Shown piece by piece: positions 26,167 through 34,047 of a stretch of DNA of 64,000 nucleotides. The notes below the pieces were generated by a model. That model made no database searches. It saw only the letters and a list, made by a program, of their open reading frames with translations, and was not told where the DNA came from. Position 1 is the first letter of the stretch, and each line of letters opens with the position of its first letter. Made by a program: the position numbers and the translations under genes. Where the stretch lies: NCBI RefSeq assembly GCF_002571385.2, contig NW_019217805.1:173140-237139 (forward strand), read 5' to 3'. Origin of the DNA: Stylophora pistillata (lineage: Eukaryota).

Positions 26167-29100
26167 ATGTGTTCAAGTAGGATTGTAAACAGCTTTTGCA
26201 TTATAGTTGGAATCGTAATTTCGTTAAAACTATGTTCGTCCGTCGCCGATGTTGACGATGATGATTGCTTATCGCGAGGACGAAACTGCACTTGGTGTCT
26301 GAACGATGGAAACTGCGGATTTTGCGACAAATGCGGTGATCATTGCCACAAACCTGGAGCAATCCATTCTTTAGAGAACTGTACAAACTGTGCTTCTTGT
26401 ATTCCTGGGAATCTTGCGGGTTCAAAGAAGGGTTACGACTGCAGAGCAGAATGGTAAGCTTATCCATCGATTACAAGCTATTTATCCACGATCAAAGTAA
26501 ACACTTTCTCGCTTCAACAACCGCGCTTTTCCAGTGTTCCACGGTGGACATGAGACTTTCCTGTCATTTAGAATCCCATTTTTACCACTAAGCCACGTTA
26601 AGAGTGTTACAGAACATTTTAATAAAGAAAAGGCAATTAATAATGCTACAGTCTTGTCCGACCGTCTGTTTGTACAATGATGGCGTGATTTCACCTCATA
26701 CGACTTCGATAAATGGATTGGTGTAAAAGATGTTAAAATTATTTTTCTGTTTTAACGCTGTTAATTTTCAGGTAATTATGAAGTTCAATGAACTTAATGC
26801 CTGGTTTTGTCTTTATTGGAGAAGTTAAAATCCACTTTAACTCACGTGGTTAATTACTTTTGAGTTGAAATTTTTTTTAATGTTATTCATCAATTTTCTT
26901 TCGTTATTTTCTCTTTGCTAATTTCTTCTATTAACCTTTTTTAATTTTCATATTTTAATTGTATGAAGTACTTCCACGCAATGAGATCTTTACATGGGAA
27001 TACAGTATCTCCTTTACATGGGAATTAAAGATTATTAAAGAAGCTTTGCTTTTCTGGATGGACAAATATAAAAGCTGAGCTTCATATATCTTTGAAATGG
27101 GTTCACATTTTTTTCACGAAATCAGCGAACACCTGGCATATCTTCAGCATGGAATTTTGTGAAATGCACCCTTAAATAAAATTAAGATTTTGTCCTATAA
27201 ACATCCCAAAGGATGAAAATCATCTATATTTGACAAAAAGCACCCTCTCTTGTCGCAGGATCTTTGCTTAAGTTTTGAATTAGACAAAAAATTTTTTAAT
27301 TATTTTCTTAATTTTAAGATGTTAAGTGTACCAATTTTAAAAATAAGTTTACCTATCTTTATTCTTTATCTATCTCGTCAGGTATTATTATGAGAAATGC
27401 CCAGAGGTTGTCAGTGAACAGAAGACTGTGTACGTTGAGATAGCTCTTTATCTTATAAATCTCCACTCAGTGGATTTAAAGGCTGGAACCTTTCATGCTG
27501 ATTTCTATCTGTACTTCAAAGGTGTGTGCTACATTTAAAATTCCTATATTGAATTGACAATCTCTCAGGTACTTTAAAAAATTCCCACACACAAGAGTTA
27601 TCTCAAACTCTAGGTTTTAACTGTTTGCTTATCACCAGCAGATATGATCATACTAAAGAGAAACAAATAGCTTTTTCTTACCCCCCTTCCTTTATGCATG
27701 CGTTATCAGGAGCTTCAAAATCACAAAATACAATTATAGCGATATGCAGACAATGATCAAAACAGAAAAAACCAATAAAATTAGTATAACAGTGATAAAG
27801 ATTTAAACATTAGAAGAAATAATTTAAAAAAAAACAGTAATAACGATGATGATGATGGCAATGGTGGTATATAATTGCCTAATCCTCAGGCCAATACTTG
27901 CTTGCTCTGGTTCCTGTCTCTGCCCCTAATTGTCACATTAACTCTTTGACCTCAAAGAGGGGCTGGCATTTAATTCTTCCTTACAAAATTTTACCCAAGA
28001 ATCTCACATGAAGGTCGTGAGAATAAAAGAAATGATCACCAGTTAAAGAACACTTGATTGTTAAACAAATTCTCCTTTTCAGCACCTTAATAAATGTATA
28101 AAGAGCAAAAGGGAGAATATGTATATTGATATTAGGGTAACTATATAAAGGGTCTAAGTACTATCAAAAACAAGATTTTGAACTAAGTAACTAGCTAGAA
28201 GGGGATAGAAGGCTGGCCAAATTAAGCAACATTGGACTAACTGAACATTAGAATATTGCCATATTTAAGAAATATAGATGAACTAAATGGGCAACAATTT
28301 CTTTTTCTTATAACACAGTACCTGAAGGACAGACAATGTACACAAAACAGAAATGTAAAGATGGTCTTAGAGGAGCCTGCTTTGAGCTTGTAAATGCTGC
28401 TGGCCAAGCAGAGGTCAGCAGAACTTATTGCTTATAACTTATCTCTGGGAGAGAGAGATGTTCTATTATGTTAACTCTGGAGTTAGATCAATTATGACAT
28501 TTTTTGGCACAACTTACTGGAAAATTTTTTCCTCATAAAAAAAAACATTAATACCTCTTATTAACTGAGTTTGAGGTCCATGCCATAGGTTTTTGACCCA
28601 CTGTTTTCCCCCCTGGATTTATTACCCAGCTAAGTACAAAGCACGCAGGCCATAAATCTGAGCAGAATACAAAAGTGATGGATAAAATGAGGTGAATGGA
28701 AAAATGAGAAGATGGATAAAACAAGGTGAATAATGACAAAAAAAAAACTGACTTGCACTTAAAATTATTGCAGGTTTCCAGCCATGAGGGAAAGTATTTC
28801 AGGGTGAAATCAGCTTTTAACTTTGCAGCAGATCTTCAGGACTATCCGTAAGTGTGGTAAACTCACTAATTGACAATTTGTGCCCATATTTAGCAATCGT
28901 TCCAATACTTTGGAATGAAAGATCTTGAATTAATTTTGTTTTTGTACAGCTATGACAATCAAACACTGAAAATTGTAATACAAGATATGGAAATGACAGC
29001 CAAGGAGCTCAGATGGAAAGTTATGCAGGTATACGTATTTTAAAAAATCTGAAGTGTACTGTTAATTCATTTCCATATACTGGGCATGCAGTTAGGCACT

Positions 29101-32100: not shown

Positions 32101-34047
32101 TTTATGGTCGGAGTCTACGGATTTATTTTCGCTTCGTTCATTGTTACGATAGTTATGTTGAGACTTCAACGGGAAAACTACTATTACTATGCAGATACAT
32201 TCTACAGCTACACAGAATGGCTGGTAGGAATTACTTTTGTTTACCTCATTGGAGAGATAGAACTTACTCTCTTATTCATAGGATGGTTAAATCGCAATGA
32301 TGAAAGCCGATATCCTATCACGTTGTTTGTCACGATATTCCGTAGCAAATCTCGCCGCACACCTTTGACTTTGAAGCTTTGACTTTGGCCCGAAGTAGAC
32401 CTCGGATTTGACTCAGCTCTGGATCGGATGTGACATGCCCCCGGATTTGATCCGGAGTTTGCTTTTGACTCCAATGCAAGTTAACTCAGACTTTACTTGA
32501 GTTTCGGTGAAAGTCTTACTTGGAGTATAGAAAGATGTTTTTCCTCTTGTCACGAGCATGGGACAAAGAAAAAAATCGGAGTCTCCTTGCGGAATCGAAC
32601 CGCAGACATTCAGGTTCCGTGTTCCGATGCTCTTTCTCTCACTTAAAGTTGACTTGCGTTTTGGACTCGACATGAACTCGGGTTTGGCACGGATTCCACT
32701 CGGGTCGGGACTGATGTAACTGAATTCGGATTTGGGGAAAATCGAGTATGATTTAGACTCCAGTTCGGATTTAAATCGAATGATCGGACTTCCGGCTCTT
32801 GGAAATGGCTTTATTCGTTCGGTTTAAACAACGAAGGAAAAGTATCAAGCCATTTAACACATTTCCCAACTAATCTGAAACCATTTTTGTTGATTTTTAT
32901 GTGTTGATTGTTCTTTGCTGCAGGTGTGGTTTACAGCGCCAACGTTCTTCTTCTTTCTCTATTACGTGAATTTATCGCTTGAAAATGTACTGCTTTATGA
33001 AGTCCTTGTCGCTGTTCTGTCTCTGATACTCAACAGATTCGTCTCGTGTCTCAAGTAAGAACTTTGTCACTAGTTATGGAACGGAGTTACACAGGGGCGG
33101 GTCAGAAATAATATATTGTGGGGGTGGGTTCAAAATTCCTTCTCGATCAACTCCCCTCCTTTCAATCGCAGTTGTACGCGCCCACACACACACGCGCACA
33201 CACACACACACACGCAAAGACAAATCATCCAGTTGGGTAGTAATAGGCGATACTGTTGTCACATCTTTGTGGTTGAAAATGATGATGGAGGGGTGGGGGT
33301 GTTCAGGAGACCCCCCTCTGCATCTGCTTTGGATTGCATATCTTGTGCCTTCATTTCCCCATGCATGTTCACTTAATTAAGTAAGAGTGCTGGTGATTAA
33401 CAAGGCTCTAATGACACGTGAATGTGTTTTGCTTTTGCAGATCCCGTTTGTTCAGGTTACTGAAGTTTGACACATCATCGGGAACGAATTGCCAAAGTCC
33501 GCTGGAAGAAACTTTTAACAGACGAGGCGACGGATACCTCAGACTAACTCAAGACGAGGTAGGAGAGAAAAGTTGATGAAGATGTATGAAAAACATACAG
33601 CTCCCTATATTAAGAGAATTATCATTCGTGTTTTTCTCGTTGCCATGTAACGTAGCTCTATTTTCTGCCTTTAAAAGCACACACAACCCACAATTCCTCT
33701 ATTCGCTCCAACAAAGGGCTAACGCTCGAAACGTCAGCTTTTGTAATCGTTACGATGGCCAATTTACCATTTCAACTTTGTTGATATATCCAAATTATTT
33801 CGTTACCCCCACCGACGCAGCCCCAAACAGTTTCTTTAGAAACTATCAGCCTTTATTAAGAGAAATATTGCCGCGCGCAATTATCGCAGAACTAATCAAG
33901 GCAAGCTCATTTGTTCTTATCATCACCCAGGAGTCAGAGCTGCCGTCACATTCAGCTGCGTGTAAGCCTTGTTTCCCTGGTAACCGTGACAACACATGTG
34001 AGGAGCCCTGCCCAAAACAGCAACCTACGCCCAATAAGAAAGCTTAA
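26167..34047 (+). CDS. Cys-less (Pro-loop) pentameric ligand-gated ion channel subunit with N-terminal PSI-like Cys-rich domain
   Basis: Exons 26167-26453, 27382-27521, 28319-28413, 28774-28847, 28950-29028, 30215-30321, 30867-30984, 31389-31447, 31890-31953, 32080-32223, 32924-33054, 33441-33558 (or read-through to stop at 33576), 33931-34047; all GT-AG and in phase. Motifs: YLINLHSVDLKAGTFHADFYL, DLQDYPYDNQTL, GW, SRYEFLFHMRR, M1 FFKIFLPPLFIVLV, M2 RLWIDGSLLVSAVMFH, LTLADRF, M3. Confidence 0.88.
29631..29925. mobile_element. hAT-like MITE with 5-bp TSD
   Basis: CAGTGGCGGATCC...GGATCCACCACTG flanked by TAATC on both sides. Confidence 0.75.
30515..30790. repeat. Dispersed CCAAT-rich repeat family
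   Basis: Related copies at about 37885-38140 (-) and 42345-42670. Confidence 0.65.

What the first reader, a model, noticed from the sequence alone, without database searches (positions are those of the whole stretch)
26167..34047. Intron-rich animal gene encoding a bacterial-style Cys-less pentameric ion channel fused to a PSI-like extracellular domain
Seen: 12-13 small exons, mostly invisible in the ORF track, splice in phase into a 477-510 aa protein. It has a signal peptide, then a Cys-rich module (CLSRGRNCTWCLNDGNCGFC...CIPG...C..EWYYYEKC), then a pLGIC beta-sandwich and M1-M4. The signature loop reads FAADLQDYPYDNQTL: YPxD is kept but both Cys-loop cysteines are absent, and the M3-M4 linker is only about 20 aa. 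Known: these are hallmarks of prokaryotic GLIC/ELIC-type channels; Cys-less pLGICs have been reported in some invertebrates and protists; prokaryotic pLGICs can carry extra N-terminal sensor domains; CxxC..CG[WF]C..C..W..C is the plexin-semaphorin-integrin (PSI) pattern. Inference: a PSI-appended Cys-less channel is an architecture I do not recognise as characterised. It may be gated or clustered by a protein or peptide partner rather than a classical neurotransmitter.
Basis: partly seen in the sequence, partly recalled or inferred. Interest (0 to 1): 0.88.

Follow-up and report, generated by a model that had tools for sequence, protein, structure and literature searches.

The report
Coral Cys-less five-helix channel gene
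A real, expressed 13-exon coral gene encodes a bacterial-type pentameric-channel subunit that lacks the animal Cys-loop, has a private cysteine-rich module at its outer end and a predicted fifth membrane helix, is conserved across cnidarians, and does not appear in the papers I could search.

Summary
RNA-seq from three studies plus raw reads confirms nine GT..AG junctions, including the critical exon 1-2 joint (26453/27382). Homologous transcripts fix the last three. The 13-exon, 510-aa product is letter-for-letter Stylophora pistillata XP_022779122.1, annotated "uncharacterized".

It is a genuine pLGIC homologue. A family profile hits sTeLIC (E 1e-7) and GLIC. The AlphaFold model superposes on GLIC and GluCl at Z 21. 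The Pro-loop YPxD is kept and both Cys-loop cysteines are absent. Its best prokaryotic relatives (Micrarchaeota, 30% identity, 116 bits) score higher than the only other pLGIC gene detected in its own genome (48 bits over one exon).

Two corrections:
- **PSI call is weak.** Only the first 23 residues of the 12-Cys module resemble a PSI domain. Pfam and PDB searches give no PSI hit, and the module did not fold confidently.
- **Extra helix after M4.** The M3-M4 linker is about 3 residues, not 20.

The family is single-copy here and vertically inherited across Cnidaria. It has a sister group of unknown eukaryotes and a Euglena relative, all with the fifth helix. This is a new variant of a known kind. 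Function is untested.

The parts
26167..26453 (+). Exon 1 (aa 1-96): start codon, signal-peptide-like segment (aa 1-27, 26167-26247) and 11 of the 12 cysteines of the N-terminal module (from C34 at 26266)
   Evidence: ORF. In-frame stop at 26158-26160. Donor GT confirmed by RNA joints in X1, X6, X9 and X21. RNA contigs extend about 110 nt upstream of 26200 (table 8).
27382..27521 (+). Exon 2 (aa 96-143): the WYYYEKCP linker with the 12th cysteine (C102, 27398-27400), then beta1-beta2 of the extracellular domain
   Evidence: Joints 26453/27382 and 27521/28319. 91% identical to P0009 by tblastn.
28319..28413 (+). Exon 3 (aa 143-174): short ECD segment with the conserved pair C155/C163. This pair is not at the Cys-loop position.
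   Evidence: RNA joints. C155 and C163 are invariant in A1.
28774..28847 (+). Exon 4 (aa 175-199): beta6 and the first half of the Pro-loop (from 28816), ending in the split codon of P199
   Evidence: RNA joints. P199 is nearly invariant in A2.
28950..29028 (+). Exon 5 (aa 199-225): second half of the Pro-loop (YDNQTL, to 28968) and beta7. No cysteine flanks the loop.
   Evidence: RNA joints. Aligned to the sTeLIC and GLIC loop.
30215..30321 (+). Exon 6 (aa 226-261): beta8-beta9
   Evidence: Joint 29028/30215 in X1, X9 and X21 (one contig in X6 retains part of the intron). Joint 30321/30867 in all runs.
30867..30984 (+). Exon 7 (aa 261-300): loop C, beta10, pre-M1 and most of M1 (from 30931; FLPPLF motif)
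   Evidence: RNA joints. Model helix 283-304.
31389..31447 (+). Exon 8 (aa 301-320): end of M1, the M1-M2 loop and the start of M2 (from 31413; R315 = 0', W317 = 2')
   Evidence: RNA joints. Helix 309-334. Prime numbering is inferred from the alignments.
31890..31953 (+). Exon 9 (aa 320-341): the rest of M2 (to 31932; S321 6', V324 9', M328 13', E335 20') and the M2-M3 loop
   Evidence: RNA joints. Alignment to GLIC M2.
32080..32223 (+). Exon 10 (aa 342-389): M3 (32089-32172), a 3-residue linker, and the first half of M4 (from 32182)
   Evidence: Acceptor confirmed by RNA. Donor CTG|GTAGGA set by homology to P0019 and P0009 and by identity with P0045.
32924..33054 (+). Exon 11 (aa 390-433): second half of M4 (to 32968), the M4-M5 loop with an NLS sequon, and the fifth hydrophobic helix M5 (32978-33049)
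   Evidence: tblastn of P0019 gives 98% identity. Model helices 376-404 and 408-443. GLIC's C-terminus aligns at model residue 406. Hydropathy 2.07.
33441..33558 (+). Exon 12 (aa 433-472): basic juxtamembrane stretch (KSRLFRLLKF) and a variable tail
   Evidence: tblastn of P0019. AG/GT boundaries and frame.
33931..34047 (+). Exon 13 (aa 473-510 plus stop): conserved C-terminal motif CKPCFPGN..C..PCPKQQ.TPNKKA (33961-34044)
   Evidence: tblastn of P0019. The motif is conserved in Anthozoa and Scyphozoa.

Best explanation
This is the single-copy Stylophora pistillata gene LOC111320711. [quoted passage not shown] Shown: the gene is spliced and expressed as modelled. The protein has a pLGIC beta-sandwich and M1-M4 that superpose on GLIC and GluCl. 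The Pro-loop proline is kept without the flanking disulfide, and the M3-M4 linker is minimal. Three additions surround this core: a family-private 12-cysteine extracellular module on the N-terminus, a fifth hydrophobic helix after M4, and a tail of about 80 residues ending in a conserved Cys-rich motif. Inferred: because there is no close paralogue, it most likely assembles as a homopentamer in a surface or secretory-pathway membrane. It would open in response to a small extracellular cue, such as pH, a divalent ion or a small amine, as in its closest solved relatives sTeLIC, GLIC and DeCLIC. The disulfide-rich cap would sit on top of the extracellular domain as a modulatory or docking domain. 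M5 would return the chain to the cytoplasm, so the conserved tail can engage trafficking, lipidation or scaffolding machinery. Ion selectivity cannot be read from the sequence. There is no -1' Glu and no PAR motif, and an invariant Trp sits at 2'.
For: Gene model: nine GT..AG joints in RNA from three studies plus stranded raw reads. The model is in phase and 510/510 identical to XP_022779122.1. Homology: profile A1 versus PDB gives sTeLIC 6fl9 at E 1.2e-7 and GLIC at about 1e-4. Fold: AlphaFold pLDDT is 70-93 over residues 111-440. Foldseek gives GLIC at E 1e-17 with TM 0.76. VIA-align gives Z 20.8-21.7, rmsd 2.3-3.1 A over 274-277 residues, with model 105-406 matching GLIC 9-315. Prokaryote-likeness: Micrarchaeota 30% identity over 265 aa at 116 bits, then Methanothrix and Chloroflexi. 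The only other pLGIC locus found in the own genome gives 48 bits, and that exon scores 65 bits on Pfam Neur_chan_memb against 14.9 for this protein. Fifth helix: helix 408-443 lies beyond the aligned pLGIC fold. A strongly hydrophobic segment plus a 45-101-residue tail follows M4 in all cnidarian, sister-group and Euglena members. P0036 and P0037 end at M4, as do the prokaryotic ORFs judged from their printed C-termini. Conservation: 77% identity to Nematostella and 59% to Hydractinia. The gene tree follows the cnidarian species tree. The gene is single-copy.
Against: No functional data exist. Pentamer formation was not supported or refuted (no verdict). Pfam's curated thresholds for Neur_chan_LBD and Neur_chan_memb are not reached. 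The extracellular domain is shorter than usual between beta2 and beta6, so the canonical agonist pocket may be altered. A ring of Trp at 2' could occlude a conventional pore. The membrane topology of helix 5 and the position of the Cys-rich module are predictions only. The module and the tail have pLDDT below 50.
Confidence: 0.6

Rival explanations
1. The N-terminal module is a true PSI domain. The channel would be gated, clustered or positioned by a protein partner of the plexin, semaphorin or integrin kind.
For: The first five cysteines have PSI spacing and the CG[FW]C signature. phmmer with exon 1 reaches a 7-repeat PSI protein (P0013, E 2.7e-5 on 1.8 billion proteins). hhalign of the module profile against those repeats gives probability 82% and E 1e-5, against 0.1% for the reversed control.
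Against: Only 23 of about 70 columns align. The module has 12 cysteines (10 in the sister group) against 8 in PSI. The Pfam PSI and PSI_integrin models give no hit at E<=10 in six members. The module profile hits no plexin, semaphorin, integrin or MET chain in the PDB at E<=10. The fold is not predictable (pLDDT 45). The other two weak phmmer hits are not PSI proteins.
Confidence: 0.2
2. Helix 408-431 is the real M4, and helix 376-404 is a membrane-associated or cytoplasmic MA-like helix. The subunit would then have the standard four passes with an extracellular C-terminal tail whose cysteines are disulfide-bonded.
For: Segment 376-404 is only weakly hydrophobic (Kyte-Doolittle about 1.3) and contains D, E, T and S, while 411-429 scores 2.07. 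A Cys-rich tail is more usual outside the cell.
Against: In the AlphaFold model (pLDDT 81-90 in this region) helix 376-404 occupies the M4 position. GLIC, GluCl, GlyR and GABA-A chains all align up to model residue 405-407, that is to their own C-terminal M4. Basic residues (KSRLFRLLKF) follow helix 5, which fits a cytoplasmic exit. Hexacorals carry an N-x-S/T sequon in the 405-407 loop.
Confidence: 0.15
3. The protein keeps the pLGIC fold but no longer conducts ions. It would act as a receptor or scaffold, for example a sensor whose output is the cytoplasmic tail.
For: Trp is invariant at the pore-lining 2' position in Cnidaria and the sister group (numbering inferred). There is no standard charge-selectivity motif. 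The extracellular domain is shortened. The cytoplasmic tail motif is strongly conserved.
Against: M2 keeps the usual pattern: 6' Ser, 9' hydrophobic, a 20' acidic ring and the 23' Pro. The ECD-TMD interface residues are highly conserved. No pLGIC-fold protein without channel function is known to me (my own knowledge).
Confidence: 0.12
4. The gene is a recent bacterial transfer or a contaminant in the coral assembly.
For: The best-scoring relatives outside the family are archaeal and bacterial. RefSeq names the orthologues 'proton-gated ion channel-like'.
Against: There are twelve spliceosomal introns, and spliced stranded transcripts are seen in PolyA and other RNA libraries. Orthologues in Anthozoa, Hydrozoa and Scyphozoa follow the species tree. 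Identity to prokaryotes is only about 30%. A eukaryotic clade that includes Euglena has 96/93 support.
Confidence: 0.01

Closest known systems
sTeLIC and GLIC (prokaryotic pH-gated pLGICs; PDB 6fl9, 3eam)
   Same: They are the best sequence-profile hits among solved structures (E 1.2e-7 and about 1e-4). The fold is the same at Z 21. They also have no Cys-loop disulfide, a YP[FY]D Pro-loop, a minimal M3-M4 linker and an sTeLIC-like R...G pattern at the start of M2.
   Different: The coral protein adds a signal peptide plus a 12-Cys module, a fifth helix and a tail of about 80 residues. It is shorter between beta2 and beta6, has Trp at 2', and its gene is intron-rich. Gating by pH is only an analogy and was not tested.
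DeCLIC (Desulfofustis pLGIC with an extra N-terminal domain; PMC9897478)
   Same: It is a pLGIC core carrying an additional extracellular N-terminal domain. By its authors' statement it is the only such channel with a solved structure, and its N-terminal domain is described as modulatory.
   Different: My recollection is that the DeCLIC N-terminal domain is a large beta-rich two-lobe domain. Here the addition is a disulfide-rich module of about 70 residues with no detectable relation to it. DeCLIC has four transmembrane helices.
Eukaryotic Cys-less 'Pro-loop receptors' (Jaiteh, Taly and Henin 2016, PMC4795631)
   Same: That survey defined a eukaryotic Cys-less clade from protists and invertebrates and listed one isolated Nematostella sequence. 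This family fits that description.
   Different: The survey cut off everything before the ECD and after the fourth helix. The Cys-rich module, the fifth helix and the tail were therefore not described, and no member was characterised. I could not verify that their Nematostella entry is P0021.
PSI domain (Pfam PF01437; plexins, semaphorins, integrin beta, MET)
   Same: The spacing C-x6-C-x2-C-L-x5-C-G-[FW]-C of the first five cysteines matches.
   Different: There is no hit to the Pfam model or to PSI-bearing solved chains. The module has 12 cysteines rather than 8, and the second half does not align.
Animal Cys-loop receptors (nAChR, GABA-A, GlyR, GluCl)
   Same: The overall fold is the same (GluCl Z 21.7). 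They belong to the same superfamily.
   Different: This protein has no Cys-x13-Cys loop, no long M3-M4 cytoplasmic domain and no PAR or GEK selectivity motif. Pfam Neur_chan models score 11.6-14.9 bits, whereas one exon of a genuine paralogue scores 65 bits.

Membership tests
pLGIC / Pro-loop receptor superfamily | Extracellular beta-sandwich followed by a four-helix M1-M4 bundle | tested here: met
   In the AlphaFold model, residues 105-406 superpose on GLIC 9-315 and on GluCl, GlyR and GABA-A at Z 20.8-21.7, rmsd 2.3-3.1 A over 274-277 residues. Foldseek gives E 1e-17.
pLGIC / Pro-loop receptor superfamily | Conserved proline in the beta6-beta7 loop (YPxD) | tested here: met
   The loop DYP199YD is present. 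P199 is nearly invariant across 22 family members and aligns to the sTeLIC and GLIC FPFD/YPFD.
pLGIC / Pro-loop receptor superfamily | Significant sequence similarity to established members | tested here: met
   The family profile versus PDB gives sTeLIC at E 1.2e-7 and GLIC at 5e-5 to 3e-4. blastp to prokaryotic pLGIC ORFs reaches 116 bits.
pLGIC / Pro-loop receptor superfamily | Pfam Neur_chan_LBD / Neur_chan_memb above the gathering score | tested here: not met
   The scores are 11.6 bits (cut-off 26) and 14.9 bits (cut-off 28.1) for P0045. These models are built mainly on animal receptors, and the family is too divergent for them.
pLGIC / Pro-loop receptor superfamily | Pentameric assembly around a central M2-lined pore | tested here: inconclusive
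   The two-copy prediction scored 0.02, which is no verdict. No pentamer model could be run.
pLGIC / Pro-loop receptor superfamily | Ligand- or stimulus-gated ion conduction | not testable with these tools
   This needs electrophysiology or flux assays.
Metazoan Cys-loop receptors | A disulfide pair 13 residues apart flanking the beta6-beta7 loop | tested here: not met
   No cysteine lies between residues 164 and 301. The only ECD pair is C155/C163, upstream of beta6.
Prokaryote-type (GLIC/ELIC/sTeLIC-like) pLGICs | Cys-less loop, M3-M4 linker of a few residues, closest sequence kin among prokaryotes | tested here: met
   The linker is residues 373-375 in the model. The nearest non-family relatives are Micrarchaeota, Methanothrix and Chloroflexi.
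Prokaryote-type (GLIC/ELIC/sTeLIC-like) pLGICs | Chain ends shortly after M4 | tested here: not met
   About 105 further residues follow M4, including a hydrophobic helix (408-431) and a conserved tail. The printed C-termini of the prokaryotic ORFs end in a hydrophobic stretch.
PSI domain (PF01437) | Match to the family profile | tested here: not met
   There is no PSI or PSI_integrin hit at E<=1 for exon 1 or at E<=10 for six members. No PSI-bearing chain appears in the PDB profile search.
PSI domain (PF01437) | Eight-cysteine knot with the CGWC core | tested here: inconclusive
   The first five cysteines fit (hhalign 23 columns, probability 82%). The remaining seven do not align. Disulfide connectivity is unknown.
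PSI domain (PF01437) | PSI fold | tested here: inconclusive
   The module has pLDDT below 50 in the full-length model and 45 when folded alone. I ran no fold search because a low-confidence model gives meaningless matches.

The most novel reading that the evidence does not exclude
Cnidaria, an unidentified eukaryotic sister group and Euglena share a previously undescribed five-pass branch of the pentameric-channel superfamily. A prokaryote-type core has been rebuilt for eukaryotic cell biology. A fifth transmembrane helix moves the C-terminus to the cytoplasm, where a conserved Cys-rich tail couples the channel to intracellular machinery. Interchangeable extracellular N-terminal modules set the stimulus: a disulfide knot in animals and a periplasmic-binding-protein-like domain in Euglena. 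The animal form would be a non-synaptic sensor of pH, ions or a secreted or surface protein, with an unusual Trp-ringed pore.
Probability: 0.3. Interest if true: 0.8.

Novelty: new variant of a known kind. Interest (0 to 1): 0.6.

Why it matters
Pentameric ligand-gated channels are defined by one extracellular domain and four membrane helices, and the animal ones by their Cys-loop. None of the papers I found characterises a eukaryotic Cys-less member; the 2016 survey that described them says so of its own set.

This family offers a tractable example. It is a single-copy gene that is strongly conserved for over half a billion years across corals, anemones, hydroids and jellyfish. It is expressed in adult coral and sits in sequence between archaeal or bacterial channels and animal receptors. 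If the fifth helix and cytoplasmic tail are real, they change the textbook topology of the family. If the Cys-rich cap modulates gating, it would be a eukaryotic counterpart to DeCLIC's N-terminal domain.

The family also bears on how prokaryote-type channels entered and persisted in animals. For coral biology it would add an unstudied candidate sensor of the extracellular ionic or pH environment.

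Tried and rejected
- **441-aa read-through model.** My first model let exon 10 run on to the stop at 32380-32382. I rejected it because P0009 and P0019 show a donor at 32223 and three further exons, and the 510-aa model equals XP_022779122.1.
- **Homo-oligomer prediction.** I ran two copies of residues 105-445. 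The score was 0.02, which is no verdict and counts neither for nor against binding. A first attempt failed because the machine was busy.
- **Folding the N-terminal module alone.** Mean pLDDT was 45, which is unusable, so I ran no fold search on it.
- **ESM Atlas on residues 30-106.** No usable hit.
- **ESM Atlas on sister-group protein P0030.** It returned only 0.85-score leads to eukaryotic pLGIC-like clusters, most commonly Rotifera. This is a lead for the group's origin, not evidence.
- **The look-up of encoding contigs.** Their taxonomy stays unknown.
- **Supplements of PMC4795631.** They do not hold the alignment as text, so I could not verify the identity of that paper's Nematostella sequence.
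- **The search of earlier findings.** Nothing near this place.
- **Weak phmmer hits P0014 and P0015.** They are not PSI proteins (He_PIG/HYR and fn3), so I treated them as cysteine-composition noise.
- **Recent bacterial transfer or contamination.** Rejected on introns, spliced transcripts in PolyA and other RNA libraries, and vertical inheritance.
- **Handling of the spliced protein.** I joined the exons only inside scripts, from window.fa. I never typed the joined sequence into a search tool. Exons were searched by reference. The identical database protein P0045 served as the reference for whole-protein steps. I did not run a junction-spanning DNA pattern search for exons 10-13, for the same reason.

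Full report
**Gene model**

The + strand between 26167 and 34047 carries a 13-exon gene. Exon 1 is an ORF that starts at the first ATG after an in-frame stop. I laid Logan contigs from three RNA studies (X1, X6, X9) and raw stranded reads (X21) on 26200-32199. They show nine intron joints, all GT..AG:
- 26453/27382
- 27521/28319
- 28413/28774
- 28847/28950
- 29028/30215
- 30321/30867
- 30984/31389
- 31447/31890
- 31953/32080

Raw reads lie almost only with the first mate on the minus strand. That is what a standard stranded library gives for a plus-strand RNA. The nine joints keep the frame.

My reads call ended at 32199, so I first let exon 10 run to a stop at 32382, giving 441 aa. Homologues showed this was wrong. 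P0009 and P0019 align to a further exon at 32924-33054, and P0019 aligns to two more, ending at the stop at 34047. With donors and acceptors placed at canonical GT/AG sites, the model is 13 exons and 510 aa.

I joined the exons only inside scripts. The joined model is letter-for-letter identical to database protein P0045, which is Stylophora pistillata XP_022779122.1 / PFX32540.1, "uncharacterized protein LOC111320711". I used P0045 as the reference from then on. I did not type the joined sequence into any search tool, and I left out any junction-spanning pattern search. The window is therefore Stylophora pistillata or something indistinguishable from it.

The last three junctions rest on three things: this identity, conservation of the encoded residues across Cnidaria, and near-identical Pocillopora proteins (P0019, P0042) on 2.3-4.4-kb contigs that cannot contain the introns.

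**Is it a pLGIC?**

Pfam alone would not say so. P0045 scores 14.9 bits on Neur_chan_memb and 11.6 bits on Neur_chan_LBD, both below the curated cut-offs (similar for P0009).

Three stronger tests agree that it is:
- **Profile search.** A profile of ten family members against all PDB sequences hits sTeLIC (6fl9) at E 1.2e-7 over profile positions 185-377. GLIC entries follow at about 1e-4. The Pro-loop, pre-M1, M1, M2 and M3 are aligned.
- **Predicted structure.** An AlphaFold2 model built on a 22-sequence alignment has pLDDT 70-93 from residue 111 to 440.
- **Fold comparison.** Foldseek matches GLIC at E 1e-17 with TM 0.76 normalised on GLIC. VIA-align gives Z 20.8-21.7, rmsd 2.3-3.1 A over 274-277 residues, to GluCl, GLIC, GlyR, GABA-A and nAChR.

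P199 is nearly invariant in the family, and there is no cysteine between residues 164 and 301. The Cys-loop disulfide is therefore absent. The only cysteine pair in the extracellular domain is C155/C163, in a short hairpin upstream of beta6.

**How prokaryote-like is it?**

A scan of one genome per bacterial and archaeal species found 22 homologues. The best are two Micrarchaeota, a Methanothrix and three Chloroflexi. On a fixed search space, blastp gives 116 bits and 30% identity over 265 residues for the best.

A six-frame search of the coral's own genome finds this gene's own exons and only one other locus, on contig C69. That locus gives 48 bits and 23% identity over one 108-residue exon. 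The same exon has a PAR motif and scores 65 bits on Pfam Neur_chan_memb, so it is an ordinary anion-type Cys-loop receptor. The comparison is uneven, because the paralogue is split by introns and only one of its exons aligned. Even so, the family is single-copy here and is much nearer to prokaryotic channels than to the animal receptors next to it. That fits RefSeq's automatic name for the Porites and Pocillopora orthologues, "proton-gated ion channel-like".

It is not a recent transfer. It has 12 spliceosomal introns. Orthologues exist in Scleractinia, Actiniaria, Octocorallia, Hydrozoa and Scyphozoa at 59-97% identity. The gene tree reproduces Anthozoa versus Medusozoa.

**The wider family**

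A profile search of 5.8 billion proteins adds three groups:
- **A sister group (P0030-P0035, P0040).** These are about 460-520 aa, 37-40% identical, and come from unnamed ENA assemblies.
- **P0036 and P0037.** These are two 350-aa proteins of unknown origin.
- **P0038.** This is an 860-aa Euglena longa protein whose N-terminus is a Bmp/PnrA-like binding-protein domain.

In a maximum-likelihood tree, Cnidaria plus the sister group has 99/98 support. Adding Euglena gives 96/93. This eukaryotic clade sits in an unresolved polytomy with the archaeal and bacterial sequences. No animal Cys-loop outgroup was available, so the tree says nothing about the root.

The ESM Atlas gives only a weak lead towards rotifers.

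**The N-terminal module**

Residues 34-102 hold 12 invariant cysteines and end in the invariant W-Y-Y-Y-E-K-C-P that leads into beta1. A phmmer search with exon 1 against 1.8 billion representatives found only 15 proteins. Twelve are this family's own exon-1 products. The module is therefore private to the family, not a common mobile domain.

Evidence for a PSI relationship:
- The next hit, P0013 (E 2.7e-5), is a genuine 7-repeat PSI protein (Pfam E 5e-24).
- A local hhalign of the module profile against those repeats gives probability 82% and E 1e-5. It covers only 23 columns, the motif C-x6-C-x2-C-L-x5-C-G-[FW]-C. A reversed control gives 0.1%.

Evidence against:
- Pfam PSI and PSI_integrin give nothing at E<=1 for exon 1, and nothing at E<=10 for six members.
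- A profile of the module hits no plexin, semaphorin, integrin or MET chain in the PDB.
- The module has 12 cysteines, not 8. The sister group has 10.
- AlphaFold could not fold it, either in context or alone (pLDDT below 50 and 45).

I therefore call it a family-specific disulfide-rich module with a PSI-like first half. I do not call it a PSI domain.

**A fifth helix and a conserved tail**

The model has helices at 283-304, 309-334, 345-372, 376-404 and 408-443. Every solved pLGIC aligns up to model residue 405-407, which corresponds to its own C-terminal end of M4. For GLIC, residues 9-315 align. So M4 is 376-404, the M3-M4 linker is about three residues, and 408-443 is an extra helix.

The core of that helix (411-429) has a Kyte-Doolittle mean of 2.07. 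M3 scores 2.34 and M1 scores 2.42. A basic stretch (KSRLFRLLKF) follows it. A sequon sits in the three-residue loop before it (N405, present in hexacorals).

A strongly hydrophobic segment after M4, plus a 45-101-residue tail, is present in all cnidarian members tested, in the sister group and in the Euglena protein. P0036 and P0037 end at M4. The printed C-termini of the 22 prokaryotic ORFs also end in a hydrophobic stretch, although my hydropathy script failed on the prokaryotic rows.

The simplest reading is a fifth transmembrane pass that returns the C-terminus to the cytoplasm. This is an inference from the model, the hydropathy and the charge distribution.

The tail ends in a motif conserved from corals to jellyfish: C-K-P-C-F-P-G, a spacer, then P-C-P-K-Q-Q-x-T-P-N-K-x-A. 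Hydrozoans lack it. The 2016 survey of the superfamily trimmed everything after the fourth helix and before the extracellular domain, so it would not have seen either addition (PMC4795631). Searches for a fifth helix in pLGICs, for PSI with pLGIC, and for the gene identifiers found nothing.

**Pore**

I anchored M2 on the alignments to sTeLIC and GLIC. That gives R315 as 0', W317 2', S321 6', V324 9', M328 13', E335 20' and P338 23'. There is no -1' glutamate and no Pro-Ala-Arg motif, so charge selectivity cannot be predicted. The 2' tryptophan is invariant in Cnidaria and in the sister group. It is unusual for a pore-lining position. I had no coordinates, so I could not see which way it points.

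**Mechanism**

Shown: the gene, its splicing and expression, the fold, the absent Cys-loop disulfide, the prokaryote-like affinity, the extra modules, and the conservation and single-copy status.

Inferred:
- It forms a homopentamer, because there is no close paralogue to co-assemble with. The pair prediction returned no verdict.
- A small extracellular cue gates it, by analogy with sTeLIC (described as a pH-gated homolog in bioRxiv 10.1101/2024.05.02.592243; alkaline gating in 10.64898/2026.01.07.698087), with GLIC (proton-gated), and with DeCLIC (activated by calcium depletion, and the only pLGIC with an extra N-terminal domain whose structure is solved; PMC9897478).
- The cap acts as a modulatory or docking domain.
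- The tail serves a cytoplasmic role.

The family occurs in non-calcifying, non-symbiotic cnidarians too, so its role is not specific to calcification or symbiosis.

**Verdict**

Its interpretation is right on the channel and weak on PSI, and it missed the fifth helix.

The gene is already in RefSeq as an uncharacterised locus, and Cys-less eukaryotic pLGICs are a known category. This is therefore a new variant of a known kind rather than something categorically new. The architecture (private Cys-rich cap, prokaryote-type core, fifth helix, conserved tail) appears undescribed, and the gene is a good target for structure and electrophysiology.

Noticed in passing
window 28049-28095 and 29600-29999 (introns 2 and 5): RNA word depth is in the thousands here, against 10-80 on the exons. 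There are many variant letters and loose ends running into unrelated sequence. These look like interspersed repeats transcribed from many other loci, not part of this mRNA.
   Followed up: no
window 28950-29674: One PolyA RNA contig (X6 record 6) reads from exon 5 straight on into intron 5 for about 650 nt. Other runs show the 29028/30215 splice. This indicates partial intron retention or pre-mRNA.
   Followed up: partly
window 32224-32382: If intron 10 is retained, the frame stays open for 53 more codons and ends at 32380-32382, giving a 441-aa product with a different hydrophobic C-terminus. I have no evidence that this form is made.
   Followed up: partly
window 33150-33200 (intron 11): There is a (CA)n-type dinucleotide repeat. 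It shows up as His-Thr/Arg-Val-Cys runs in the ORF translations.
   Followed up: no
window 13933-14907, minus strand: A 324-aa ORF carries a Galactosyl_T domain (Pfam E 2e-30). It looks like a large exon of a beta-1,3-galactosyltransferase-type gene upstream of the channel gene.
   Followed up: partly
window 41397-42074 (+) and 46001-46903 (-): There are two long ORFs without any Pfam hit. The first contains a motif that I recall as GIY-YIG-like and possibly retroelement-derived (not tested). The second is Ser/Pro/Ala-rich.
   Followed up: partly
L029:5082-5405 (G000:C69:127081-127404): This is the only other pLGIC locus that the own-genome search detected. It is an exon with a PAR motif that scores 65 bits on Neur_chan_memb, so it is an ordinary anion-type Cys-loop receptor.
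   Followed up: partly
P0038 (Euglena longa, 860 aa): This member of the same five-helix clade has an N-terminal Bmp/PnrA-like substrate-binding domain in place of the Cys-rich module. That is a eukaryotic parallel to prokaryotic pLGICs fused to binding-protein domains.
   Followed up: partly
L014, L017, L018, L021, L022, L027 (bacterial loci): Six of the 22 prokaryotic homologues are 554-838 aa, with large N-terminal extensions before the channel domain. I did not examine their domains.
   Followed up: no
P0030-P0035, P0040 (unnamed ENA assemblies): This sister family has a 10-Cys version of the cap, the same WYYE.CP junction and a fifth helix, but a different tail. The N-termini are Asn-rich. 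The source organisms are unknown, with rotifers only a weak lead.
   Followed up: partly
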